From Selaginella moellendorffii (Eukaryota; Plantae; Lycopodiophyta), in the NCBI RefSeq assembly GCF_000143415.4, contig NW_003314267.1, positions 2,521,839 through 2,585,838 on the forward strand: a DNA stretch of 64,000 nt, written 5' to 3'. Shown in pieces: positions 1,372 to 51,838 of this stretch. The notes beneath the pieces are model-generated. The model was not told where the DNA came from. It did no database searches and saw nothing but the letters and a program-made list of their open reading frames with translations. The translations under genes were made by a program, and so were the position numbers. The number at the start of each line of letters is the position of its first letter. Position 1 is the first letter of the stretch.

Positions 1372-2573
1372 ATGGATTTAGGATCGCGGCAGCATTTCCA
1401 GACGCAGCCGCCAGCGTCGTCGTCGTCGCCACCGCCACAGCCGCCGCCAGCGGAGGAGCAGCAGCACCATGGATTGGTGGACATGGAATCGATCTGGACG
1501 GAGGATTCAGCTGCCATGGCTGCTGCTGCTGCCGATGCCGCGGGCGTCGTCGTCGACGATGCGTTCCAGATGCCTCATTTCCTGCTCCCTCCTCCCAATC
1601 TCCCTCACAATTTCGCGCAAAGCTGCCTCGCCAATCCCGCGCAGGTGATGACCGAGGAGCAGCTTGAGACGCTGCGGCGCCAGATTTCGGTCTACGCCAC
1701 GATCTGCCAGCAGCTCGTGGAGATGCACAAGGCAACGATCTCACACCAGCACACATACAATGGTAAGAACTCTCTCCCTTCTCTCTTCCCTCTCGATCAT
1801 ATTCTTTCTCGGTCGCGGAAATCTCGCTAGATAATTTGAAACATTCGCCGCGTGTGCTCCTGATCAGGCTTGCTTCTCGGCCACCAATCTCCTGCCATCC
1901 AGGACTCGTCTCCAATGCTCCTGGGAATCCACCACAAGCCAACGTCGCGGCAAAGATGGACACCATCGCAGAACCAGCTGAGGATCCTCGAGAGGCTCTT
2001 CAAGCAGGGCAATGGGACGCCAAACCGGCAAAGGATCAAGGAGATCACGAGCGAGCTGAGCCAGCACGGCCAAATCTCCGAGACCAATGTCTACAACTGG
2101 TTCCAGAACCGGAAGGCTCGAGCAAAGAGGAAGCAACGACACAACAATGCGACCCCCTCCACGACCACCACCTCCTCGCAGCACAAGGACGCCGAATCGG
2201 AAGTGGAGACCGATGGAGATCACTCGCCGGAAGAAAAGAGGAGCAAAGTAAGCTCGTCCACGCCGCAGCAGCAGCTCCAGATGGATCAAAGCAACACCAC
2301 CACCGAAGCGATTGGTAAGTTTTCATCGATCGTTTTTCTCGGTTCCCAGGCACTCTCTGATTTTTTTCGTTTGATTCTCCAGGAACTCGCTACGCGGTCG
2401 TCATGCTCAATGGAAAGGCCTGGAAAGTAAAACCAGGGAGAATCAACGTAAGGAGTAACTTTGGAGACAATGCCGTGCTGCTAGATCCGAGAGGTCATGT
2501 GGTGGCCACGAGCGAGCAAGGCTTGACTTTAGATCCTCTACAACCTGGTGGAAGCTACACGGTTGCTGTGTGA
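1372..2573 (+). CDS. WOX: WUSCHEL-related homeobox transcription factor, WOX13-type (exons 1372-1762, 1868-2314, 2383-2573)
   Basis: WOX13 N-terminal motif [28 protein letters not shown], homeodomain [23 protein letters not shown], and an in-frame third exon after a GT-AG intron. Confidence 0.93.
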
Positions 2574-2966
2574 ATAAATTACAACAAAGAACCATAAACA
2601 AGAGCATTGATGTTTGATCTCATGGCTTTGCCAACTTTTCACGTCTTGGGTGTTCTTCGACTTGCATTAACTTCGTGGTATTTAATGGAACAGCGCATGC
2701 ATGCAGAGTCTTCGCGGGATCCGACAGCAAACGATCAAGCAAAGTCCAACTTCATGCTTACGTGTCCAAAATTCTCTTTGTTCCCGCAAGTCAAAGCTCT
2801 ACTTTTCTTTAGTTCTTGTTCTGCCTTGTCCAGGTGTTCATAGATCTCCTCACTGGTTAAATTGATTTCCAATGTTTTGTCACTGGTGAGATCCTAGAGA
2901 GGAGGAACAAAAACCTCGCGGCTGACTGATTCTCAAAAATTTTAAAGCAAATCCACCGGTTTGCAT

Positions 2967-4590
2967 TTACAAACCAATGATTCTCTGGAATTTCTGTATC
3001 TGATTTAAGAATATCCAAGTCATCTGCAAGTAGCAAGGCCAATTAAACACTAGAAAAAAGAAGGAAACAAAGATTGTATCTGTACCATAACGTGAGGAGC
3101 AATCCGAATGCAGTATGTCCCAAAGCCAGTGTAGAACTTCAAAGGCCCATAAGTTTTCAGCGTCTTGACAGCGCAGTCAACTGAGCCCGAGTACGGGTAT
3201 TTGCCGTCCGGGCCGGGCTGCATCTTTTGGATTTGAGTCTTGACGTAATCGAAAGGGAGGCTGCATGCCGACGCAAAGAAGCCCGACACAGCACTGGCAC
3301 CTGCGAGACACACGATATGTCTTCGATTAGCTCACGAAGTTCAAAGAGAGAGCACCGCAGCAGACAAGCAAGGGGACAAGTATTTAAGCTTACCAGCTTG
3401 AAGAGCAAGAAAAACCAGCCACACAAAGAGGAGGAGGAGCTCTCAAGTCTGAAGAGAGAAACGAGAAAGAACGAAACTGAAGCTTACACAGAACCACAAA
3501 AGCGAAAGAAAGTATAGATAGGAAGAAATGAGCTCATCGACGGAATACAAAGAAGGAACTTGTAGAAAGAGGAAACTTTGACGCAAAACTACAAAGAAAA
3601 AACTAGAGAGCTTACCAACAACAGTTTGGACCTCGGAGAAATTGAGCGTGTCCTTGAAGAACTCCACGGACTGATCGTAAGACGCCAGCATTCCCATGTT
3701 GAGAGCCATGGCACGAACAACAGTCGGGCCAGCTCCCTTCCACAGTGCCAAAACTCCCTCGTCGTGAGCGATTCGAGAGAGAGCGTGCAGCGCATGCTGG
3801 TAATTCCTTCGCTGATTTGGGGGCAGCACGGCATCGGCTTGCATGCGAATGAGTGCCAAGTCTGCGGGACTTCCAACGGAGGCACCGATCGCTCCCGCAG
3901 TGAGACCGCAAAAGGCCTTTTGGTAGAGCGGGAGCGGCTTTCCATCGTTGGCTTGAGTGGCTTTCGCGGTCAGCAGCCTTCACACGCAGAGAGCAAAGCC
4001 AAGTCTGAAGTCAAGGAGACAAATAAAATAGAGGTTTTAGAGTAAACAATTCTCGATTTGTACCTGAAAGATCCGAGACGAGCGGTGGTGTAAGTTGCTT
4101 GACGCAGCAATCCAGCAGTGAGACCCTGGAACAAAGAAAAGAATAAAATTGGAGCTTCAGCCAAGAGAAAAACGTCTAAGGACTGCATGGAAGAAAATTA
4201 GAAGAAGGAAGGCTTCATAGAAGAAAACATAGAACTTCAAACAATCGAGAGAAAAAATTCGATGACACTCCTCGAAATGAAAATGCCGGAGCTCGAGTGC
4301 AAGGATGGAAATATGGAGTACCTTGTACAGAGAGAAGAATCCCTCGTTCTTGATCACTTGTTTGGCGACCTGGAACGCTCCTCCTTGCCCTAGCTGGATC
4401 CGGACCTGGCACACCGCAAAATCCAGTCGAATCGAAATATTTCGGGACGGATATGCGATCTGCGCACCTTGATCATGTCAATGGGCTGGATCACAGCCGT
4501 AGCGCACATCCCCGCGGTGCCGCCATTCACAAAGGGCTTGATCACACTCCATACCGTCGGACACCTCTTCACCTTGTCGTCCACGGCCAT
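2967..4590 (-). CDS. DTC: Mitochondrial dicarboxylate/tricarboxylate carrier (multi-exon; alternative upstream ATG at 4608)
   Basis: Carrier signatures PFVNGG..IQPIDMIKVRIQLGQG, GLLRQATYTTARLG, ALIRMQAD, SLPFDYVKTQIQKM, RIAPHVM/MTWIFLNQIQKFQRIIGL*. Confidence 0.93.
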
Positions 4591-28555: not shown

Positions 28556-30253
28556 ATGAGAAGGCTACCTCAAAGTTTGGATGGATCTGTGAGGCAGCTG
28601 CTGGAGCTCCAAGATCAACCACAGACTTGCTCGATCTACAGCTCCATCCTGCGGCAATGCATCGATTCACGGGCACCGCTGGGTGTCGGCAGGGTTGTGC
28701 ACGATCACATCGCCAGCCACGGGCTGGATCGGGGATGCTTTCTCGGGAATTTGCTGCTCCAGATGTATGCGGCTTGTGGTGGATCTGGCGCGGACGCCGA
28801 GTCAGTGCTGGCGAGACTTCTCGAGCCGGGTGTTTTCTCGTGGAACATGGTCATGGCAGCATATGCCAACAAGGGGCAACTGCAAGAGGCTCGGCGGATC
28901 TTTGAGCTCTCGCGGAGGAAGAATGTGGTGTCATGGACGATCGTCATGGCGGCGTTCTCTCAGAGTGGTCGGATCCGTGAGGCTGGGACGATGTTCCAGG
29001 CGATGCCGCAGCACAATCTCGTCTCCCGGACGGCGATGATCCGAGCTCTTGGCCAGAGAGGGGATTTTCGATCGGCTCGGAGACTGTTTGAGACGATGGA
29101 GGAGAGGAACTTGGTGTCCTGGAACACTGTAGTGGTGATCTACGCTCAGGTGGCGATGGTGGATGCTGCGATGGCCGTGCTAAGAAGAGCTCCCGGGTGG
29201 GATCTTATCTCCTGGACAACCATGCTCGCAGCCTTTGCCCAACGAGGAGATCTTTGTAAGGCGAGAGAGATCTTTCATTGGATGAAGCACCGGAGTGAGG
29301 CTCCCTGGAATGCGATGATCCAGGCGTACGCCGAGGCTGGCGAGATCGATCGCGCGAGTGAGATGTTTGAGGGGATTCCCATGCGAGACATCATCACCTC
29401 GACGACGATGGTGGACGCGTATGCTCAGCTCGGGGATCTTGCTGTTGCGCGAGCGATCTTCGACGAGATGCCCGAGAGGAATTCGGTGACTTGGTCGGTG
29501 TTGATCTCGGCCTACGGCAAGAACAACGGGAGAGAGTCGCTTCGTCTGTTCCTCCGGATGGATCTCGAGGGGTTTCGAGCCGAGGAGATGACCTACGTCG
29601 CGGTCCTGGATGCGTGCTCGAGCGCGGCCGCGGTTGCCGAGGGCAGGATCATCCACGAGAGCGTTTTGGATCGGGGGCTGAGCAGGGACTTGCGAATCGG
29701 GAGCGCTCTCGTCGATTTCTACGGCAAGTGTGGCCAGCTCGAGACCGCTCGGTTGATCTTCTCGGAGCTCCCGATCCAGGACGTGATACTCTGGACAGCG
29801 CTGATCACGTCGTATGCTCACAATGGCCATCTCCCGGAAGCTCTGGCGATCTTCCGCGAGATGCTGCTCGCCGGGATCCTCCCCGACTGCGTGACGATCG
29901 TGAGTGTTCTCTCGGCTTGCAGCCATGGCGGAGTGGAAGGCGATGGATGGATTCACGTCGTGCGAATGGCTTGGGACTACGATCTGGAGCTTTCGCTGGC
30001 TCACTACCTTTGCGTGATGGATCTTCTGGGACGATCGGGGAAGCTCGAGCTGCTGGAGGATCTGGTGACAAGCATGCCTTTCGAGCCGGATGTTGTGGCA
30101 TGGACGACTTTGCTCAGCGCTTGCAAGGAGATTGGAGACGAGAGACGCGCTGCTCGAGCTGCTCGAAAGCTCCGGGAGATGGATTCCAACGCCATGGCTC
30201 CGTATGCTCTGCTCTCCAACATGCACGCTGGTGTGGCGAACGCGGAGGATTGA
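28556..30253 (+). CDS. PLS-class PPR protein with E-type end, rich in short (S) motifs
   Basis: Repeated about 31-aa motifs (NVVSW..M..AY..G...AR..F..MP), then HYLCVMDLLGRSG..MPFEPDVVAWTTLLSAC..YALLSNMHA. No DYW domain. Confidence 0.92.
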   Translation: MRRLPQSLDGSVRQLLELQDQPQTCSIYSSILRQCIDSRAPLGVGRVVHDHIASHGLDRGCFLGNLLLQMYAACGGSGADAESVLARLLEPGVFSWNMVMAAYANKGQLQEARRIFELSRRKNVVSWTIVMAAFSQSGRIREAGTMFQAMPQHNLVSRTAMIRALGQRGDFRSARRLFETMEERNLVSWNTVVVIYAQVAMVDAAMAVLRRAPGWDLISWTTMLAAFAQRGDLCKAREIFHWMKHRSEAPWNAMIQAYAEAGEIDRASEMFEGIPMRDIITSTTMVDAYAQLGDLAVARAIFDEMPERNSVTWSVLISAYGKNNGRESLRLFLRMDLEGFRAEEMTYVAVLDACSSAAAVAEGRIIHESVLDRGLSRDLRIGSALVDFYGKCGQLETARLIFSELPIQDVILWTALITSYAHNGHLPEALAIFREMLLAGILPDCVTIVSVLSACSHGGVEGDGWIHVVRMAWDYDLELSLAHYLCVMDLLGRSGKLELLEDLVTSMPFEPDVVAWTTLLSACKEIGDERRAARAARKLREMDSNAMAPYALLSNMHAGVANAED

Positions 30254-32318: not shown

Positions 32319-33989
32319 ATGCACGACGCCTTGATCTATGGCTATGGCTGCCTGGTGAAGCAGTGCCACAGCCTTGACGATGGCAGGAAGCTCCACGCCC
32401 TAATCGATCACGATGGCCACACCACCAACACATTCATCGCCAATCTCCTCGTGGAAATGTACGCCAGATGCGGCAGCCTCGAGGATGCGGTGTCGTGCTT
32501 CGCCGCCATAGCCGCCAAGAACATCTTCTCCTGGAACATCGCCATCGCGGCATTTGCCCGCCACGGGCATTTCGACGAGGCCATGGATTGCTTCCGGCGG
32601 ATGCAGTTCCAAGGGATCTTGCCGGACGATTTCACCCTCAGCTCGGTTCTAGGTCCGTGCTCGCAGATCAAGAACGCGGCGAGCGAGATCCGGGGGATTC
32701 ACGAAATATTTCTCCAGCGCGGCGGATGCGATGCAGTGGTGGCGGCAGCGCTGATCCATGCATATGGCCGATGCGGCCGGATTGACGAGGCGAGATCGCT
32801 CTTGTGCCAAGAGCAGGAGAGCGACAGCGATGTGTGGAATTCGCTCATGGCTGTGTGTTCTTGGAATGGGGAGGGGAGAAGGGGCTTGGAGATTTTCTGG
32901 AGGATGCATCAGATGGGAGTGAGGCCGGATGGATTTAGCTTCAGCACTGCGATTGGCGCGTGCACGGCGATCGGCGATTTCGCGCAGGGATGGAGCATTC
33001 TTGGCCAGATCCGTTGCCTGGAGCTGGATCGAGAGAATGAGATCCTCGCCGTGGCGCTGATCGAAATGCTTGCAAAGAGCGGGAAAATTCAAGAAGCCTG
33101 TAGCGTCTTCCAGCACGTGAGAATCCCAAGAACCCTAATCTTGTGGAACGCGACGATCGCGGCGCTAGCGCAGGGTAGAAGAATCGGTGCTGCGCTCCGG
33201 CTCTTCGAGATGATGCGCCGGGAGGGGGGTCTGGCTCCAGATGCCGTTTCCTGGACGACGCTCATCACGGCGCTGGAAGATCGCGAGGAGGAGGCGTTTC
33301 AGCTCTTGCGCAGGATGGATTTGGAAGGTGTGAAGCCAGACAGGGTCACATTCGTCGCGGTCGTGAATGCCTGCTCCAATTCCTTGAGTAGCGTCCGGGC
33401 AATCCACTCCAGGATTGTTGGATCGGGCTTTTCATCCTTCTTGGAGATCAAGAACGCTCTGCTCGCGAAATATTCTCAATGCGGTGGTCTCCAGGAGGCC
33501 AGGTCGATCTTCTCGAGCAGCGGCCAGCACAGGGACGTGATCTCATGGAGCTCCATGATAGAATCGTGCGCCCACCACGGCCGCGGCGAAGAATCCCTCG
33601 CTCTCTTCCGCCGGATGCAGCAAGAAGGCGTCGATCCAAACGCTATAACTTTCTTGAGCATTCTCTCTGCGTGCCGGCACTCTGGATTCCTGGACGAGGA
33701 GGCGCTGCGCTGCGTGGGAGCGATGGAGGCGGATTATGGGATCCAGCCAGGGCAAGAACACCGCGCTTGCGTCGTGGATCTTCTTGGAATAGCTGGGCGG
33801 TTGAAAGAGGCCGAGAATCTCATCACCGCTGATGATCGATCCCATGGGGAAGTGGCATGGACGAGCTTCCTGGGAGGTTGTCGCGTCCATCCGGACGAAG
33901 CTGGAGCGATCGAGAGAGCTCAAGAACAGGTCCAGCATTGCGAATCGTCGGGATTTCATATCCTACTTTCCAACGTCAAATCAGGATAA
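32319..33989 (+). CDS. PLS-class PPR protein with degenerate E-type end
   Basis: P-L-S triplets (NLLVEMYARCGSLEDA, DVISWSSMI, ITFLSILSACRHSG, CVVDLLG..). No DYW domain. Confidence 0.92.
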   Translation: MHDALIYGYGCLVKQCHSLDDGRKLHALIDHDGHTTNTFIANLLVEMYARCGSLEDAVSCFAAIAAKNIFSWNIAIAAFARHGHFDEAMDCFRRMQFQGILPDDFTLSSVLGPCSQIKNAASEIRGIHEIFLQRGGCDAVVAAALIHAYGRCGRIDEARSLLCQEQESDSDVWNSLMAVCSWNGEGRRGLEIFWRMHQMGVRPDGFSFSTAIGACTAIGDFAQGWSILGQIRCLELDRENEILAVALIEMLAKSGKIQEACSVFQHVRIPRTLILWNATIAALAQGRRIGAALRLFEMMRREGGLAPDAVSWTTLITALEDREEEAFQLLRRMDLEGVKPDRVTFVAVVNACSNSLSSVRAIHSRIVGSGFSSFLEIKNALLAKYSQCGGLQEARSIFSSSGQHRDVISWSSMIESCAHHGRGEESLALFRRMQQEGVDPNAITFLSILSACRHSGFLDEEALRCVGAMEADYGIQPGQEHRACVVDLLGIAGRLKEAENLITADDRSHGEVAWTSFLGGCRVHPDEAGAIERAQEQVQHCESSGFHILLSNVKSG

Positions 33990-37206: not shown

Positions 37207-38832
37207 CTATACAGATTTCTGGGAAGATTTTAATGTGGCTTTACTTGGAGATCTGTGCATGTTAGCCAAAAGAACATATGATGACGCTGCAGTGGGCTCG
37301 AGATCGACGGTCGAGATGGCAGCAGCGGTTCCATGCAAGTGACGCTTGTGGCTTCGGCAAGCACTCAACAGGCATCTCCACTGGAGAGCATTTGGCACGA
37401 AAGGCATGCTCGTGATCAAGTCCCAGGCATCTTCAATCGCGCCCTCCCTCCCCAGCAGATCGATCATGCAGCAGAAATGCTGCTTGATCGGCTCTGTGTG
37501 AAAATCCTCGCGCATCGACACAAAGCAGCGCTGCCCCGAGCTCATCGTTCCCCCGTTGCTGCACGAGATGAGAAGGGGTATGAAACAGATGGCGTCGGGA
37601 GAGATACCGGTCCACGACATTGACTGGAAGAGGTCAAAGGCACGGTCAAGATGCCCATTCTGGGCATATGCTGTGAGCATAGTTGAGGAGGATACCAAGT
37701 TCTCCTCCGGGATCCTATGGAACCTCCGTCGAGCAAAAGTCAACTCACCGCCGCCATCGGTCATAATGTCAACGCACAGGATCGAGTTCCACGAGACAAT
37801 GTCCCTCGCGGGCATTTGACTGAAGAGGTCAATGGCACGGTCAATGCGACCGGCCGCCACCCAAGCCGCCAGCATCGTGTTCCACGAGACGAGGTCGTGC
37901 TCGGGCATGTCCGAGAGGATATTCGCCGCCTCCTCCACACGCTCGTTCTGGGCATACGTTGATAGCATCGCATTCCAGCACACAAGGTTCCTCTCACGCA
38001 TCGTGTCAAAGCTGCATTTGGCATCCTCCAGATGCCCTCGTTGGGAATAGGCAGACATGATGCTGGTCCACGATGCCATGTCGTGCTCAGGCATTTCTTC
38101 GTATACAGACTTTGCAGCTTTGAGCTGATTTCTCAAAACGTGAACGAACAACATTGCATTGTACGCCACCAAGTTCCTTTCTAACATTGATACAAACAGT
38201 CGCTTTGATTCGATCAAATTCCCGGTTTGGGCAGTTGCGACGAGCATAGTAGTTGTAGACACTATATTCCACTCCGGCATCTCATTGTAAATCCAAACAC
38301 TGCAGTCCAGATTACGGATGTGAGCGTAGCCAGACAAGAGCGAATTCCAAGAAATCAAGTTTCGTTCTGGCATAGAATCAAATGTAGCCTTGGCACAATC
38401 CAAATGCCCGTTTTGGGCATAAGCAGAGATCATTGCATTCCATGAAACAATTGTCTTTTCCATAAGAGAATCAAAGATCCTTTTTGCATCCGAAAGCTTT
38501 TCATTGTGTGCATAGGCAGCCAGCATGGCATTCTGAGATTCCGAATTTTTACTTGGCATGGAAGCAAAAATACTCTCCGCCTCTTGCATTTGGCCATTTC
38601 TTGCATAGGCAGAGAGCATGAACACCCACGAGTGGGCGTCTTTTGTTGAAATACCATCAAAAACTTTACGAGCTTGGAGTGTGTCTCCACATTTACCATA
38701 CATCTCAATGAGCTTGTTGTGAAGGAAAACATCTGTGGGGTGAATTGCACTGCTGATGTGGGCGTGGATTTTCCTAGCTATTGTCACTGTCTTGCTAGAT
38801 TCAAGCCAAAGAATCCATTTGTTTCGATCCAT
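37207..38832 (-). CDS. PLS-class PPR protein, S-motif-rich, E-type end
   Basis: Tandem about 31-aa motifs, HFCCMIDLLGREG..MPFVPN..LLSAC..YVLLANMH. No DYW domain. Confidence 0.92.
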   Translation of the reverse strand: MDRNKWILWLESSKTVTIARKIHAHISSAIHPTDVFLHNKLIEMYGKCGDTLQARKVFDGISTKDAHSWVFMLSAYARNGQMQEAESIFASMPSKNSESQNAMLAAYAHNEKLSDAKRIFDSLMEKTIVSWNAMISAYAQNGHLDCAKATFDSMPERNLISWNSLLSGYAHIRNLDCSVWIYNEMPEWNIVSTTTMLVATAQTGNLIESKRLFVSMLERNLVAYNAMLFVHVLRNQLKAAKSVYEEMPEHDMASWTSIMSAYSQRGHLEDAKCSFDTMRERNLVCWNAMLSTYAQNERVEEAANILSDMPEHDLVSWNTMLAAWVAAGRIDRAIDLFSQMPARDIVSWNSILCVDIMTDGGGELTFARRRFHRIPEENLVSSSTMLTAYAQNGHLDRAFDLFQSMSWTGISPDAICFIPLLISCSNGGTMSSGQRCFVSMREDFHTEPIKQHFCCMIDLLGREGAIEDAWDLITSMPFVPNALQWRCLLSACRSHKRHLHGTAAAISTVDLEPTAASSYVLLANMHRSPSKATLKSSQKSV

Positions 38833-46600: not shown

Positions 46601-49568
46601 ATGATGCGGCTCTGCGATCGGACTCGATCGTCGCTCAAGAATGTGAGGCATTTCTTCGTGCAATCCAGCAGGATTGATCGATCTTTAATCTTTGATGTAG
46701 TTCGTGAAGCAGCGAGCGGGAGCCGTGGAGAAGATTTCCAAATTGGAGGCATGGCTGTCGAGCGGCGTTCTTGCGGCTCTCAAGGCGTGCGGGAGCTTGA
46801 GGTACTTGGAAGCAGGCCAGAGAATCCATACTGACGCCCGTGAGAGCGCGGGGATCTTTGCAGATGCTTTCGTCGCGACCGCGGTGGTGGACATGTATGC
46901 TAAGTGTGGGAAAATGGCCGACGCTCGCAAGGTGTTCGATGAGATGCCGGCTCGAGACGTGGTGTCCTGGAACGCGCTACTGCTCGGTTACGCAGTGAAT
47001 GGCCAGGAGGATTTGGCTTTGGAGCTGCTCAGGGGAATGGAAAGAAGTGGCTGCTGTCCAAACGACCGGAGTTTCGTGGCTGGACTGATGGCCTGTGTCA
47101 ACTTGGCCGAGAAGGAAGTGGGACAGGAAGTTTGCGGCAAGGTCGTCAAGCTCGGATGCTTGGGGGAAGGGACGGAGCTCCATCACCGGGTTGCCAAGTA
47201 TGGCTACGAGTCCGACGAGTTCGTGGAGAACATCCTGATCAGTCTCTACGCCAAGTGTGGGAGCCTGGTGGATGCTCGAGCGGTGTTTGAGAAGATTCGA
47301 AGTCCCAACGTCGTGTCGTGGACAACTTTGATCATGGGATACGCGGAGACTGGTGACGGGAACTTGGCTTTGGAGATGTTCTCACAAATGGTTTCTCGGG
47401 GATGCGTACCAAACTCTCGGACTTTCGTCGCTGCGCTCAAGGCTTGTGCTACTTTGGCGTCTTCGGAGCCGGGCGAGCTGGTTGACGGCAGAGTTCTCAA
47501 GCTCGGAAGCTTAAGGAAGGGCTCAGCTATTCACTCTCAGGCTGCAAAACGTGGATTGGACAAGGATATCTTTGTGGCGAGCACTCTCGTCGATATGTAC
47601 TGCAAGGGCGGCAGCTTGGCCGATGCTACGTCGGTTTTCAGGGGAATGGCTCGCCGCGACGTCGTATGCTGGACCTCTCTCATACTCGGCTGTGCTGAAA
47701 ACGGGGAGGAGGAGCTGGCTCTAGAGATGTTTTACTCCATGCAGTCGGAGGGCTGTTCGCCGAATTCACGCACTTACGTTGCAGTCCTCGCAGCCTGTGC
47801 TGGGGTAGCACAGAAAGAAGAGGCGAAGCTCGTTGCCGGACAGTATTTGAAAGAGGTGACTCTAGAAGTTGGGAAGAAGATCCATCTGGACGCCACCAAG
47901 GGCGGTTTTCAAAGTGATACTTTCGTCGGCAACAGCTTAATTGGTATGTATGCAAAATGTGGAAGCCTGGCTGATGCTCACAAGGTTTTTGACAGGATGC
48001 CTGAGCGGGACGTGGTCTCTTGGACTGCTCTCATGCTGGGCTATGTGGAATGTGGCGAGGCCGAGGTGGCGTTTTCCTTGTTTGAGAGCATGGTCTCTGG
48101 AGGTTGCGTCCCCGATGGCAGAAGTTTCGTTGCGGCGTTGATGTCCTGTACAAGCTTGGCTGAGCAAGAAGAAGGTGACAAGCTTGCCAAAGTCAAGAGC
48201 GGGGCTTTGAAAAGAGGCATGGACATTCACTCGCTAGCCGCAAGGAACAGGTGGGACGCAGACATTTTTGTGGCTACGGCGCTGGTGGACATGTACGCGA
48301 ACTCCGGGAGCATGGACAATGCCCGGACAGTGTTTGAAAAAGTGCTTCATCGGGATGTGGTTTTGTGGAACTCGCTCATGCTGGGATACGTTCGTAATGG
48401 TGAAGCGGAGCTAGTTTTCGAGCTGTTTACCAAGATGAGAAGCCAGGGATGTCCGCCAGACTCGCAGAGCTTTGTTGCTGTTCTGACGGCATGCGGTAAT
48501 CTAGCTGAACGAGACGAAGGCAAGCACGTCAGTGGCAAAGTGGTGAAGGTGGAGTGCTTGGAAAAGGTTATGGCCGTGCACTCCGAAGCTGGTAAAACAG
48601 GAAAACTGGGCGATATGTTCGTGGCCAACACGTTGGTGGACGTGTACGCAAAATGCGGAAGCTTGCTGGATTGCCGAGCCGCATTTGACCGGATGCTTCA
48701 TCACGACGTGGTGTCCTGGAACGCTCTCATGTCAGCACTCGTTGAAAACAGCGAGGGACAGCTGGCTTTAGATCTCTTCACCAGCATGCAACAGCAAAGT
48801 GGTTTTCTTCCGGATTCTCGGACGCTAGTTGCGGCTCTTTCGGCCTGTGGTTGTGTGGTGGCACTGCAAACTGGAAAGCAAATTCAAGCTGACATCTGTA
48901 GGTGGGGACTAGAGGACAACGTTTTGGTGGCCAACTCGCTGGTCGATTTCTACGGCAGGTGCGGCAGGATCTCAGTCTCTCAACAGCTGTTTGAAGCAGT
49001 CACAGACCCGAGAAGTGTTTCGGCATGGACGTCTCTGATAGCGGGATACAGTCGTCAAGGGGACGCACAGAAGACGATTGAACTGTTTGAAGAAATGCAG
49101 AGACAAGGGATGAAAGGAGACAGAATCACGTATCTCTCAGTTCTAGCAGCTTGCAGTCATACTGGGCTTGTCGAGAAGGGAAAGACGTACTTCGAGGCAA
49201 TGCGAGCAGACCGGGACATCACTGTGGATGCCGTGCATTACGCCTGCATGGTGGATCTTCTGGGACGTGCCAATTATCTGGATGAGGCCATTGTGGTGCT
49301 GAAGAGCAATATACCATCGAACGTAGTAGCATGGACAGCGTTCCTGGGCGCGTGTGGAAAGTGGGGGAATCTAGAGCTGGGAAGGCTGGCTTTTGAAACG
49401 ATTGTGGGGCTGGACGAGAGAACTTACTCCGCTTATACGCTGATGGGAAATCTCTTTGCGAGCTTAGGAATGTGGGAGGAGCAAGCTCGGGTATTGGAGG
49501 AATGCAAGAGGATACAAACAGAGGCAGTTTTGCAAAAGATGATAAAGGTTTGCTCGTGTCAAGCATGA
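46601..49568 (+). CDS. Long PLS-E class PPR protein with expanded L motifs (probable exon 1 46601-46642, intron 46643-46700)
   Basis: 954-aa ORF of repeated P-L-S triplets with an E-type end. A short in-frame upstream exon supplies the ATG. Confidence 0.9.
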
Positions 49569-49663: not shown

Positions 49664-51838
49664 TTGTTTCTTCAGTGGGTCGTCACCAACCGCTATTCGG
49701 ATCCTTCGTATGGTTTGTGCTCTAAAGTTCACCTTATTTCATGGTCTCTAACTCACTGTTTGTTTTCCCTCAGTCTTCGAGAGCATGACATCGAACCCTC
49801 TTTCTCTGCTGCGTTGAAGTCGTGCACGGTCTTGAGAGATTGCGAGATCGGTAAGAGAATCCACTCCAATACAAATGCTGACAACACCGACGTCTTTCTC
49901 GCAACTGCCTTGGTGACCATGTACGCAAAATGCGGCAGCATGGCGAATGCCTGCATGGTTTTCGAGGGCATGCCTCACCGCGACGTGGTATCCTGGAACG
50001 CCTTGATGATGGGACACATCTCGAACGGACAGGCCGAGCTAGCTCTGGAGCAGTTTGCGCGAATGCAGACGTCCTGCCAGCCCAACGCAAGAAGTTTCGT
50101 GGCGGCACTTGCGGCGTGTGCTACAATGGCAGAAAAAGAAGACGGCCAAGGAAAGCAGACTTGGTTGGAGAAAGGGGTGTCTATCAGTTCCTCGGCAGCA
50201 GCGAGCAACTTGGTCTCCAACCTCTACGTGGCCAGCAGCCTGGTTGAACTGTACTCGAAATGCGGGGCGATGGTGGATGCTCGGAGGGTGTTTGATCGAA
50301 TAGAATCGCCTGACGTCGTGACATGGACTACGTTGATGGTCGGCTACGCAGACTCGGGTGACAGCGAGATGGCGCTTGTTTTGTTTCAAGCCATGCAGTC
50401 CCGAGGGGTGGCTCCAGATGCTCAGGCTTGTGTAGCTGCACTGAGGGCGTGCTCGAATCTGTCGGCGAGAGAAGATGGCAGGGAAGTTGATGGCAAGCTC
50501 GTGAAGATGGAGTACCTCGAGAGAGGCATGGCACTTCACTCGCTAGCGGCGAGAAATGGCTATCAGAAGGATATATTCGTGGCTAGCTCGTTGATCGACA
50601 TGTACTCCAAGTGTGGAAGCCTGGAAGACGCCTGGATGGCTTTCAGCAGGATGCTCCGGCACGACGTAGTGTCACTTACTGCTATGGTGCTGGGCTGCGA
50701 GATCAATGGCGAGCCAGAGCTAGCACTGGAGCTGTTCGAAAGAATGGTGGCTCGAGGACTCTCTCCGAACCTGAGAAGCTACGTCGCTGCGCTGATGGCC
50801 TGCGCGAGCTCGGCTGCCAAGAAACAAAGTGGAGGAGCAAAAGATGCTGGAAGAAGGAAAGAGTGCCTGGAAAAAGGCCGAGCTATCCATCTCCAATGCG
50901 TAAGCACTGGTTGTGACACAAACGTATTCGTTGCCAACACGCTCATCGACATGTATGCCAAGTGCGGCAGCCTGGAGGACGCCCGAGCGGTGTTTGACAG
51001 CATTCCAGACAGGAACGTGATATCCTGGAACGCTCTCCTGGCAGGATATGTGGAGAACGGCGAGAGTAGACTGGCACTGGAGCTCTTTAGTCGCATGGAG
51101 GCTGATCAAGCACAGGGATACGCGTTACTGGACGCTCGGACTCTCACAGCGGCTGTGAAAGCAAGTTCCATCCTCGTCGCTGTGGAATCTGGGAAGAGAG
51201 CTCACGGCATAGCCTGCAGGACAGGAGTGGAGGACGACACCGGGGTGGCAGTCTCTCTTGTTCACTTCTACGGCAAGTGTGGGATCACGGTAATAGCTCA
51301 GCAGCTTTTCGACTCTCTCAGTGGCTACAAGGACACTACGCTATGGAACGCACTGATGACAGGCTACAGCAACCAAGGCGACGCTGAGAGAGTCTTCTCA
51401 TCATTCGCGAGGATGAGAAACGAAGGCCTGCGAGGCGATGGTATCACGAGCCTGTTGCTCCTCGCGGCTTGCAGCCACGCCGGCCTGGTGGACAAGGGAC
51501 GAGAGATCTTTGAGAGCTTGCCGCTGGCGAGTAGAGCTCTGGGACACTACACTTGCATGGTGGACTTGCTGGGAAGATCGAACCAACTGGAGGCCGCGAT
51601 GGGATTGATCGCGTCTATGCCGTGGCAGCCGGATCTGGTGACTTGGATGACGCTGCTAGGCTCGTGCAAGAAGTGGAGCAACATGGAGGTGGCCAGAGTC
51701 GCGTTCCAGGAGCTGGTGAGAATCGATAGCCGGGAGGAGTCATCGTACTTGGTGATGGCCAACATCTACGCCAGCCATGGTCTGCTCGATGAGAGCTCCA
51801 AAGTTCTAGAGCTCAGGGACGAGTTGTTAGCACGGTGA
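49664..51838 (+). CDS. Tandem paralog PLS-E class PPR protein with expanded L motifs (5' end probably spliced, uncertain)
   Basis: 724-aa ORF, same motif architecture as the upstream PPR, HYTCMVDLLGRSN..SYLVMANIYA. Confidence 0.88.
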   Translation: MFLQWVVTNRYSDPSYGLCSKVHLISWSLTHCLFSLSLREHDIEPSFSAALKSCTVLRDCEIGKRIHSNTNADNTDVFLATALVTMYAKCGSMANACMVFEGMPHRDVVSWNALMMGHISNGQAELALEQFARMQTSCQPNARSFVAALAACATMAEKEDGQGKQTWLEKGVSISSSAAASNLVSNLYVASSLVELYSKCGAMVDARRVFDRIESPDVVTWTTLMVGYADSGDSEMALVLFQAMQSRGVAPDAQACVAALRACSNLSAREDGREVDGKLVKMEYLERGMALHSLAARNGYQKDIFVASSLIDMYSKCGSLEDAWMAFSRMLRHDVVSLTAMVLGCEINGEPELALELFERMVARGLSPNLRSYVAALMACASSAAKKQSGGAKDAGRRKECLEKGRAIHLQCVSTGCDTNVFVANTLIDMYAKCGSLEDARAVFDSIPDRNVISWNALLAGYVENGESRLALELFSRMEADQAQGYALLDARTLTAAVKASSILVAVESGKRAHGIACRTGVEDDTGVAVSLVHFYGKCGITVIAQQLFDSLSGYKDTTLWNALMTGYSNQGDAERVFSSFARMRNEGLRGDGITSLLLLAACSHAGLVDKGREIFESLPLASRALGHYTCMVDLLGRSNQLEAAMGLIASMPWQPDLVTWMTLLGSCKKWSNMEVARVAFQELVRIDSREESSYLVMANIYASHGLLDESSKVLELRDELLAR

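What the first reader, a model, noticed from the sequence alone, without database searches (positions are those of the whole stretch)
1372..2573. Ancient-clade WOX13-type protein carrying an intermediate-clade (WOX8/9/11/12) C-terminal domain
Seen: exons 1-2 encode the WOX13 N-terminal motif and the ancient-type helix 3 NVYNWFQNR. Exon 3, absent from the ORF track, encodes [63 protein letters not shown]. Established: this resembles the C-terminal domain of intermediate-clade WOX proteins (VFIN...G..NVR..FG.D..L..S.G..V...E.G.....LQ.G..Y), which angiosperm WOX13 proteins lack. Inference: a mosaic or ancestral architecture, suggesting the domain predates the split of the intermediate clade or was exon-shuffled.
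Basis: partly seen in the sequence, partly recalled or inferred. Interest (0 to 1): 0.75.

Follow-up and report, generated by a model that had tools for sequence, protein, structure and literature searches.

The report
Selaginella WOX13 gene with ancestral C-domain
This is the known Selaginella moellendorffii WOX13-type stem-cell regulator gene, and its extra C-terminal domain, shared with WOX8/9/11/12, is an old inherited part of the family (already present in green algae), not a recent mosaic.

Summary
Window 1372-2573 (+) holds a three-exon WOX gene. It has the WOX13/T1 N-terminal motif, an ancient-type homeodomain (NVYNWFQNR) and a 62-residue third exon that is clearly homologous to the C-terminal domain (CTDW, or T2WOX motif) of WOX8/9/11/12. 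An HMM built only from angiosperm domains scores it at 65.5 bits, E 2.6e-13 scaled to 1.84 billion proteins.

It is not new. The exact 342-aa model is a public Selaginella moellendorffii protein (XP_002962413, UniProt name WOX8-1). Its S. kraussiana orthologue SkWOX13b (cDNA confirmed by RT-PCR) and fern CrWOX13a were described in 2023 (PMC9810776) as N-motif + ancient homeodomain + CTDW proteins, with the same "domain predates the intermediate clade" inference.

What I add:
- The same three-part architecture occurs in a chlorophyte (Pyramimonas), in Zygnematophyceae (Closterium, Mesotaenium), in Diphasiastrum, ferns and Ginkgo.
- Marchantia keeps an internally deleted remnant of the domain.
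- Homeodomain and CTDW trees give the same T1 | intermediate split, which argues against exon shuffling.
- A phase-1 intron precedes the domain in all six genes mapped.
- AlphaFold (pLDDT 94.7) predicts a compact ubiquitin-like beta-grasp fold.

So the architecture is ancestral and older than published.

The parts
1372..1762 (+). Exon 1: start codon and residues 1-130 plus the first base of codon 131. The donor is G|GTAAG, phase 1.
   Evidence: Exon-wise mapping of public protein P0121 onto the window.
1645..1743 (+). T1WOX / WOX13-MOG / NTDW N-terminal motif (residues 92-124, [33 protein letters not shown]).
   Evidence: 28/33 identical to SkWOX13B. Aligns collinearly with the Pyramimonas protein. 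Weak Pfam QLQ-like hit only.
1763..1867 (+). Intron 1 (105 nt, GT..AG, phase 1), between the N-motif and the homeodomain.
   Evidence: A phase-1 intron in the same relative place is present in the Marchantia, Diphasiastrum and Closterium T1 genes.
1868..2314 (+). Exon 2: homeodomain plus an acidic/Ser-Thr-rich linker.
1948..2130 (+). WOX homeodomain with the ancient-clade helix-3 signature NVYNWFQNR.
   Evidence: Pfam PF00046, 6e-16, residues 27-87 of the exon-2 translation. 97% identical to the SkWOX13B homeodomain and inside the T1 side of the tree.
2315..2382 (+). Intron 2 (68 nt, GT..AG, phase 1), immediately upstream of the C-terminal domain.
   Evidence: A phase-1 intron lies just upstream of the domain (-8 to +1 residues from its start in the five genes that keep that start; the Marchantia remnant lacks it) in Dendrobium WOX9, a Melastoma intermediate-clade gene, Closterium, Diphasiastrum and Marchantia.
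2383..2573 (+). [quoted passage not shown]
   Evidence: AlphaFold2 model with pLDDT 94.7.
2573..2578 (+). AATAAA hexamer overlapping the last base of the stop codon. It may be a polyadenylation signal.
   Evidence: Read directly from the sequence. Not tested.

Best explanation
The locus is the Selaginella moellendorffii orthologue of SkWOX13B, a T1 (ancient-clade, WOX13-type) WOX transcription factor. It keeps the ancestral three-part architecture of the family:
- an N-terminal helical motif (NTDW),
- a DNA-binding homeodomain,
- a compact C-terminal domain (CTDW) of about 60 residues, encoded by its own exon behind a phase-1 intron.

The CTDW was not borrowed from the intermediate clade. It was present in the WOX gene of the common ancestor of green plants.
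- It was kept together with the N-motif in chlorophyte and zygnematophyte algae, lycophytes, ferns and Ginkgo.
- WOX8/9/11/12 kept it and lost the N-motif.
- It is absent from the mosses examined and from angiosperm WOX13-type proteins.
- Marchantia keeps only an internally deleted remnant.

Inferred, not shown: the protein binds DNA through the homeodomain, and the CTDW, predicted to be a ubiquitin-like beta-grasp module, is a protein-protein interaction surface for partners or self-association. [quoted passage not shown]
For: Gene model and identity
- Exon-wise mapping shows that public protein P0121 is exactly the three window exons. P0121 is XP_002962413/XP_002965624, 'WUSCHEL-related homeobox 13', S. 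moellendorffii, UniProt name WOX8-1.
- The nearest relative is SkWOX13B: homeodomain 97% identical, exon 3 67% identical at E 2e-29. Its cDNA was confirmed by RT-PCR (PMC4742569).

Homology of exon 3 to the intermediate-clade domain
- Library-wide E values down to 5e-8 for intermediate-clade WOX proteins.
- An HMM built only from intermediate-clade domains gives 65.5 bits.
- The 56-sequence alignment is nearly gap-free, with invariant G27, G46 and Y58.

T1 membership
- NVYNWFQNR and the N-motif are present.
- The homeodomain tree splits intermediate clade from T1 at 100/95, with the window protein on the T1 side.

Vertical inheritance
- The CTDW tree gives the same split at 100/98. The window domain sits beside SkWOX13B, and the subgroups on the T1 side follow taxonomy.
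- The three-part architecture is found in Pyramimonas (one collinear alignment over all three parts, E 1e-32), Closterium, Mesotaenium, Diphasiastrum, Adiantum, Ceratopteris CrWOX13A and Ginkgo, and in an unnamed metagenomic eukaryote.
- A phase-1 intron precedes the domain in all six genes mapped.
- The corresponding Marchantia exon has the same intron phases but is 124 nt instead of 196-199 nt, and lacks 25 internal residues.

Fold
- AlphaFold2 gives pLDDT 94.7 and pTM 0.78, with beta-beta-alpha-beta...beta order.
- Foldseek and an independent all-against-all structural search both return almost only ubiquitin-like beta-grasp domains, at rmsd about 2.2 A over 53-59 of 62 residues.
Against: - No RNA evidence from S. 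moellendorffii itself was available here. Splicing of intron 2 rests on canonical sites, the public annotation, the conserved domain and the S. kraussiana cDNA.
- The trees are unrooted and built on only 64-65 columns, so the order of events (a single origin followed by losses) is the most economical reading, not a proven one.
- The algal records are transcriptome, draft-genome or metagenome predictions. The organism behind P0140, P0149, P0156 and L006 is not known.
- The intron upstream of the domain varies by up to about 9 residues in position. The intron after the domain is phase 2 in T1 genes but phase 0 in the two intermediate-clade genes.
- The structural matches are modest (Z 4.6-5.6, Foldseek E > 1e-3). 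The tool itself warns that such values can reflect only a common arrangement.
- No experiment on the function of the domain was found in the papers I could read.
Confidence: 0.85

Rival explanations
1. Mosaic by exon shuffling: a lycophyte T1 WOX gene captured the C-domain exon from an intermediate-clade WOX gene. This would be symmetric phase 1-1 style exon capture.
For: The domain is a discrete exon behind a phase-1 intron. Published work calls SkWOX13b 'chimeric'.
Against: The C-domain tree separates all T1-borne domains from all intermediate-clade domains at 100/98, congruent with the homeodomain tree. The same architecture exists in chlorophyte and zygnematophyte algae, where no intermediate-clade WOX is reported (for the literature). 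T1-borne domains share their own signature (GK.W.V) that the intermediate-clade domains lack.
Confidence: 0.04
2. Exon 3 is not part of the mature mRNA in S. moellendorffii. The real protein would then end in intron 2 by read-through to the stop at 2428-2430, and the downstream ORF would be a decaying relic.
For: No transcript data for this species were examined.
Against: The splice sites are canonical and the phase is correct. All nearly invariant residues of the domain are intact, and the AlphaFold model is very confident. The S. kraussiana orthologue cDNA contains the domain. The public annotation uses the exon on both haplotype copies.
Confidence: 0.04
3. The gene really belongs to the intermediate clade (hence its UniProt name WOX8-1), and its homeodomain only looks ancient.
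For: It carries the C-domain that the literature treats as the hallmark of the intermediate clade. The community gene name is WOX8-1.
Against: Helix 3 reads NVYNWFQNR, not NVFYWFQNR. The N-terminal T1 motif is present. The homeodomain lies on the T1 side of a 100/95 branch and is 97% identical to SkWOX13B.
Confidence: 0.02
4. The domain is a degenerate Ig-like/fn3-type beta-sandwich unit, as the multi-repeat Big_13, fn3 and PPC proteins among the search hits might suggest.
For: Sixteen long repeat proteins reached E <= 1e-3. Five were scanned: two hold Big_13, two fn3 and one PPC repeats.
Against: Where several stretches matched, the scores are sums of up to 10 weak matches of 24-41% identity, mostly to the last 30 residues (the L.PG.Y.V hairpin). 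The confident model contains a helix packed on a mixed sheet and matches beta-grasp domains over its full length, not sandwiches.
Confidence: 0.03

Closest known systems
SkWOX13b of Selaginella kraussiana (GenBank KR870327; Ge et al. 2016, PMC4742569; domain description in Wan et al. 2023, PMC9810776)
   Same: Same order of parts: N-motif, NVYNWFQNR homeodomain (97% identical) and C-domain (67% identical). It is the nearest sequence in both domain trees.
   Different: The window protein is longer at the N-terminus and in the linker (342 vs 291 aa) and stops right after the domain. SkWOX13b has 13 more residues.
CrWOX13A of Ceratopteris richardii, and the Ginkgo, Diphasiastrum and Adiantum T1 WOX proteins that carry the CTDW
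   Same: T1 homeodomain plus a T1-type C-domain, all on the same side of the domain trees. The N-motif is also seen in CrWOX13A, Ginkgo and Diphasiastrum.
   Different: 31-45% identity in the domain. Diphasiastrum has extra small 3' exons after a phase-2 intron that the window gene lacks. The N-motif was not detected in the short Adiantum model.
WOX8/9/11/12 (intermediate clade / T2WOX), e.g. Dendrobium WOX9
   Same: Homologous C-domain (50% identity, E 1e-14). It is also a separate exon preceded by a phase-1 intron.
   Different: The homeodomain signature is NVFYWFQNR and there is no N-terminal T1 motif. Their C-domains form their own group (V.F.V instead of GK.W.V). The intron after the domain is phase 0 rather than phase 2.
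Angiosperm WOX13/10/14, moss PpWOX13L and Marchantia MpWOX
   Same: Same N-motif and homeodomain type.
   Different: No C-domain in about 100 angiosperm and moss sequences. Marchantia keeps only a remnant lacking 25 internal residues.
Ubiquitin-like beta-grasp interaction domains (TDP-43 N-terminal domain, BAG1/BAT3 UBL, SUMO-like and RAWUL domains)
   Same: The predicted fold and size match. The top structural hits superpose at rmsd about 2.2 A over 53-59 of 62 residues.
   Different: No sequence similarity (5-18% identity). Z is only 4.6-5.6. No diglycine tail or conjugation features. Any relationship is in fold only and unproven.

Membership tests
T1WOX / ancient clade (WOX13 group) | Helix-3 signature NVYNWFQNR in the homeodomain | tested here: met
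   Present in the exon-2 translation and in P0121 at residue 204.
T1WOX / ancient clade (WOX13 group) | N-terminal T1WOX (WOX13-MOG, NTDW) motif upstream of the homeodomain | tested here: met
   28/33 identical to SkWOX13B. It aligns with the motif of the Pyramimonas protein.
T1WOX / ancient clade (WOX13 group) | The homeodomain groups with T1 proteins in a phylogeny | tested here: met
   The intermediate clade | T1 branch has support 100/95. The window protein is on the T1 side, sister to SkWOX13B at 99/94. The tree is unrooted and has no T3 sequences.
T1WOX / ancient clade (WOX13 group) | Conserved intron between the N-motif and the homeodomain (Deveaux 2008) | tested here: met
   A phase-1 intron at this place is present in the window gene and in the Marchantia, Diphasiastrum and Closterium genes.
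T2WOX / intermediate clade (WOX8/9/11/12) | Helix-3 signature NVFYWFQNR, and a homeodomain that groups with WOX8/9/11/12 | tested here: not met
   The signature is NVYNWFQNR, and the homeodomain lies on the other side of the 100/95 branch.
T2WOX / intermediate clade (WOX8/9/11/12) | C-terminal T2WOX motif (VFIN + LQxG) encoded by its own exon | tested here: met
   A homologous domain is present, but it is the T1 subtype. This feature therefore does not define the clade.
CTDW domain family (no Pfam model found) | About 60 residues with a near gap-free alignment and conserved V15, F26, G27, L32, G37, G46, T48, L52, G55, Y58 | tested here: met
   Alignment A1. No significant Pfam family for exon 3 (only weak Cupin_6/DUF807 hits below cut-off). 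Only the Homeodomain (plus a weak overlapping homeobox-like HTH_NDX hit in two) was found in four algal full-length proteins (P0125, P0136, P0140, P0192).
Ubiquitin-like beta-grasp fold | beta-beta-alpha-beta-beta...beta topology that superposes on solved beta-grasp domains | tested here: inconclusive
   The model is confident and the top hits are almost all beta-grasp domains. However Z is 4.6-5.6 and Foldseek E is at least 5e-3.

The most novel reading that the evidence does not exclude
The WOX gene of the last common ancestor of green plants already encoded N-motif + homeodomain + a beta-grasp C-domain. Under this reading the domain is a lost-and-kept ancestral module, not an innovation of vascular plants (as in Wan et al. 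2023) and not a seed-plant T2-specific motif (as in Wu et al. 2019). The intermediate clade would simply be a T1 derivative that dropped the N-motif. Marchantia, mosses and angiosperm WOX13 would be independent loss or decay lineages.
Probability: 0.7. Interest if true: 0.5.

Novelty: already known. Interest (0 to 1): 0.35.

Why it matters
The feature in the window is a published architecture in an annotated gene, so on its own it is ordinary.

The wider survey it prompted bears on a long-running uncertainty about how the three WOX superclades relate. Two accessible papers state that the C-domain is specific to seed-plant WOX8/9/11/12 (PMC6788696), or that it arose in the vascular-plant ancestor and is missing from algae and bryophytes (PMC9810776). 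Finding it, with the N-motif, in Pyramimonas, Closterium, Mesotaenium and Ginkgo, and as a remnant in Marchantia, moves its origin to the base of green plants. It also removes the need for any domain shuffling.

The beta-grasp prediction gives a concrete, testable idea for a domain whose biochemical role is undefined, although it sits in regulators of rooting and embryo patterning (WOX11, WOX9).

Tried and rejected
1. Word search with the C-domain of SkWOX13B returned only itself. It missed the public S. moellendorffii protein, which shares an 11-residue identical run, so a blank from that tool says nothing here.
2. Exact look-ups of three long window ORFs to identify the genome found nothing. 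The genome was identified instead through P0121.
3. Pfam on exon 3 gave only sub-threshold Cupin_6 and DUF807 hits, which I rejected as noise.
4. The long Big_13/fn3/PPC repeat proteins are summed weak matches, not relatives (see rivals).
5. The DNA for Ceratopteris CrWOX13A and for the P0155 contig could not be fetched, and Diphasiastrum isoform P0130 was not on record (isoform P0212 was used instead). The fern intron position is therefore untested.
6. Literature searches for a mapped function of the domain found no deletion or interaction mapping, only the statement that WOX9 acts as an activator and that the motifs may matter in embryogenesis.
7. I did not submit any self-joined spliced protein. 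The exons were searched separately by reference. Whole-protein comparisons used the public protein P0121 that the exon-3 search returned.

Full report
**What is in the window**

- Exon 1 is 1372-1762, with donor G|GTAAG.
- Intron 1 is 1763-1867.
- Exon 2 is 1868-2314.
- Intron 2 is 2315-2382 (GT..AG, 68 nt).
- Exon 3 is 2383-2573, ending in TGA. An AATAAA hexamer overlaps the stop.
- Both introns are phase 1.

Exon 3 translates to exactly the peptide quoted. Pfam finds a homeodomain in exon 2 (6e-16) and no significant family for exon 3. The exons were searched separately by reference.

**Identity of the gene**

A word search with exon 2 gave Selaginella kraussiana WOX13B as the best hit. The C-terminus of that protein carries the same domain: 67% identity to exon 3, E 2e-29. 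Its N-motif is 85% identical. [quoted passage not shown]

A word search with the SkWOX13B domain found only itself, and Pfam had no significant family for it. I therefore ran the exhaustive phmmer search with the 62 residues of exon 3. The top hit, P0121 (342 aa, 100% identical over residues 281-342), is XP_002962413/XP_002965624, 'WUSCHEL-related homeobox 13' of Selaginella moellendorffii, UniProt name WOX8-1. Walking P0121 along the window reproduces the three exons exactly.

So the window is S. moellendorffii, and the three-exon model is already public. The many PPR genes elsewhere in the window fit that genome.

**Is the similarity to WOX8/9/11/12 real?**

Yes.
- One search returned 92 proteins at E <= 1e-3 for a library of 1.84e9. 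Dozens carry NVFYWFQNR and end in TVFIN...LQHGASYYL. The best named one is Dendrobium WOX9.
- Against Dendrobium WOX9, the pairwise results are homeodomain 49% identity (E 1e-20) and C-domain 50% identity (E 1e-14).
- An HMM built only from 12 angiosperm intermediate-clade domains scores the window protein at 65.5 bits, E 2.6e-13 even when scaled to the whole library.
- A 56-sequence alignment is almost gap-free across the domain, with invariant G27, G46 and Y58.
- About 100 angiosperm and moss WOX13-type proteins show nothing.

**Which clade?**

The homeodomain tree (49 rows) separates intermediate-clade proteins from T1 proteins at 100/95. It puts the window protein on the T1 side, next to SkWOX13B at 99/94.

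**Mosaic or ancestral?**

The C-domain tree (32 rows) gives the same T1 | intermediate split at 100/98. The window domain sits beside SkWOX13B, and the subgroups on the T1 side follow taxonomy. The two domains have therefore travelled together. The window carries a T1-type copy of the domain, not an intermediate-clade one.

The exon-3 search also recovered T1 proteins with the domain from:
- Closterium sp. and Mesotaenium endlicherianum (Zygnematophyceae),
- Diphasiastrum complanatum,
- Adiantum and Ceratopteris (CrWOX13A),
- Ginkgo biloba,
- Pyramimonas, a chlorophyte, plus a second MMETSP transcript.

The Pyramimonas protein aligns with P0121 in one collinear stretch through the N-motif, homeodomain and C-domain (E 1e-32). 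A metagenomic eukaryote contig (L006) has the same three parts in order.

**Gene structure**

I mapped six genes onto their DNA. The intron just upstream of the domain is phase 1 in all of them: S. moellendorffii, Diphasiastrum, Closterium, Marchantia, Dendrobium WOX9 and a Melastoma intermediate-clade gene. In the five that keep the start of the domain it lies -8 to +1 residues from that start; the Marchantia remnant lacks the start. This matches the earlier remark that the VFIN/LQxG motifs are flanked by conserved introns (PMC2584047).

The intron after the domain is phase 2 in the three T1 genes that have one, and phase 0 in the two intermediate-clade genes. In S. moellendorffii the reading frame stops there.

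The corresponding Marchantia exon has the T1 phases but is 124 nt instead of 196-199 nt. Its product matches only the second half of the domain. Against a full-length metagenomic relative it shows a 25-residue internal gap (E 5e-10). MpWOX therefore holds a decayed remnant.

**Fold and likely role**

AlphaFold2 on the alignment gives pLDDT 94.7 and pTM 0.78, with strand-strand-helix-strand...strand order. Foldseek against the PDB and an independent all-against-all structural search both return almost only ubiquitin-like beta-grasp domains: the TDP-43 N-terminal domain, BAG1 and BAT3 UBL domains, ISG15, SUMO-like and RAWUL domains. These superpose at rmsd about 2.2 A over 53-59 of 62 residues, but with modest scores (Z 4.6-5.6, E >= 5e-3).

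I infer that the domain is a small protein-interaction module attached to a DNA-binding homeodomain. This step is inference. No mapped function was found in the papers I could read.

**Comparison with the literature**

- Wan et al. 2023 (PMC9810776) already describe SkWOX13b and CrWOX13a as NTDW + AC-HD + CTDW proteins. They infer that the CTDW first arose on ancient-clade proteins and later joined the intermediate homeodomain. The finding and its preferred interpretation are therefore known.
- The same paper states that algae (Ostreococcus, Spirogloea) and bryophytes have only NTDW + AC-HD, and dates the CTDW to the vascular-plant ancestor.
- Wu et al. 2019 (PMC6788696) call the motif T2-specific and restricted to seed plants.
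- My results disagree with both on distribution and push the origin to the base of green plants.
- I found no paper in the searchable library that says this. Subscription journals are not covered.

**Verdict**

- Of the two interpretations, 'ancestral' is supported and 'mosaic/exon-shuffled' is rejected.
- The feature itself is already known.
- The side results (algal and Ginkgo distribution, congruent domain trees, the phase-1 intron, the Marchantia remnant and the beta-grasp prediction) are modestly new and testable.

Noticed in passing
window 28556-30253, 32319-33989, 37207-38832 (-), 46704-49568, 49664-51838: Five long intron-less ORFs are all pentatricopeptide-repeat proteins, and three of them have an E motif. 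This dense PPR cluster fits Selaginella.
   Followed up: partly
window 3050-3426 (-): ORF pieces read ...FDYVKTQIQKMQPGPDGKYPYSGSVDCAVKTLKTYGPLKFYTGF.... From memory this looks like a mitochondrial carrier gene lying tail to tail with the WOX gene. Not tested.
   Followed up: no
L006:2341-5219 (JGI metagenome 3300060285): A contig from an unnamed eukaryote carries, in order, a T1 N-motif ORF, a homeodomain ORF (NIYNWFQNK) and a C-domain ORF. That C-domain scored highest of all against the HMM built only from intermediate-clade domains (66 bits).
   Followed up: partly
P0155 (JGI metagenome 3300059835) versus Marchantia P0006, residues 250-295: A 97-aa metagenomic fragment with a complete C-domain is similar to the Marchantia remnant (E 5e-10). 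This hints that some bryophyte-like organism still has the full domain. Its DNA could not be fetched.
   Followed up: partly
L001 and L005 (intermediate-clade genes) versus window, L002, L003, L004: The first intron, a short way upstream of the homeodomain, is phase 1 in both intermediate-clade genes and in all four T1 genes. Deveaux 2008 reported no intron conservation between the WOX groups. Whether this is one shared intron was not examined.
   Followed up: no
one search hit list (P0122-P0127, P0131, P0144, P0157, P0161, P0163, P0164, P0177, P0188, P0189, P0191, P0201): Long non-plant repeat proteins reach E <= 1e-3 against a 62-residue plant domain. The five scanned with Pfam hold Big_13, fn3 or PPC repeats. 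Where several stretches matched, the scores add up many weak matches to the L.PG.Y.V hairpin. This is a caution for short beta-rich queries.
   Followed up: partly
same genome, about 255 kb upstream of the window (earlier scan note): Earlier notes of this scan describe another Selaginella WOX13-type gene (the SkWOX13E counterpart) whose last exon carries a CACTA TnpA-like domain. That is a different C-terminal addition in the same family.
   Followed up: no
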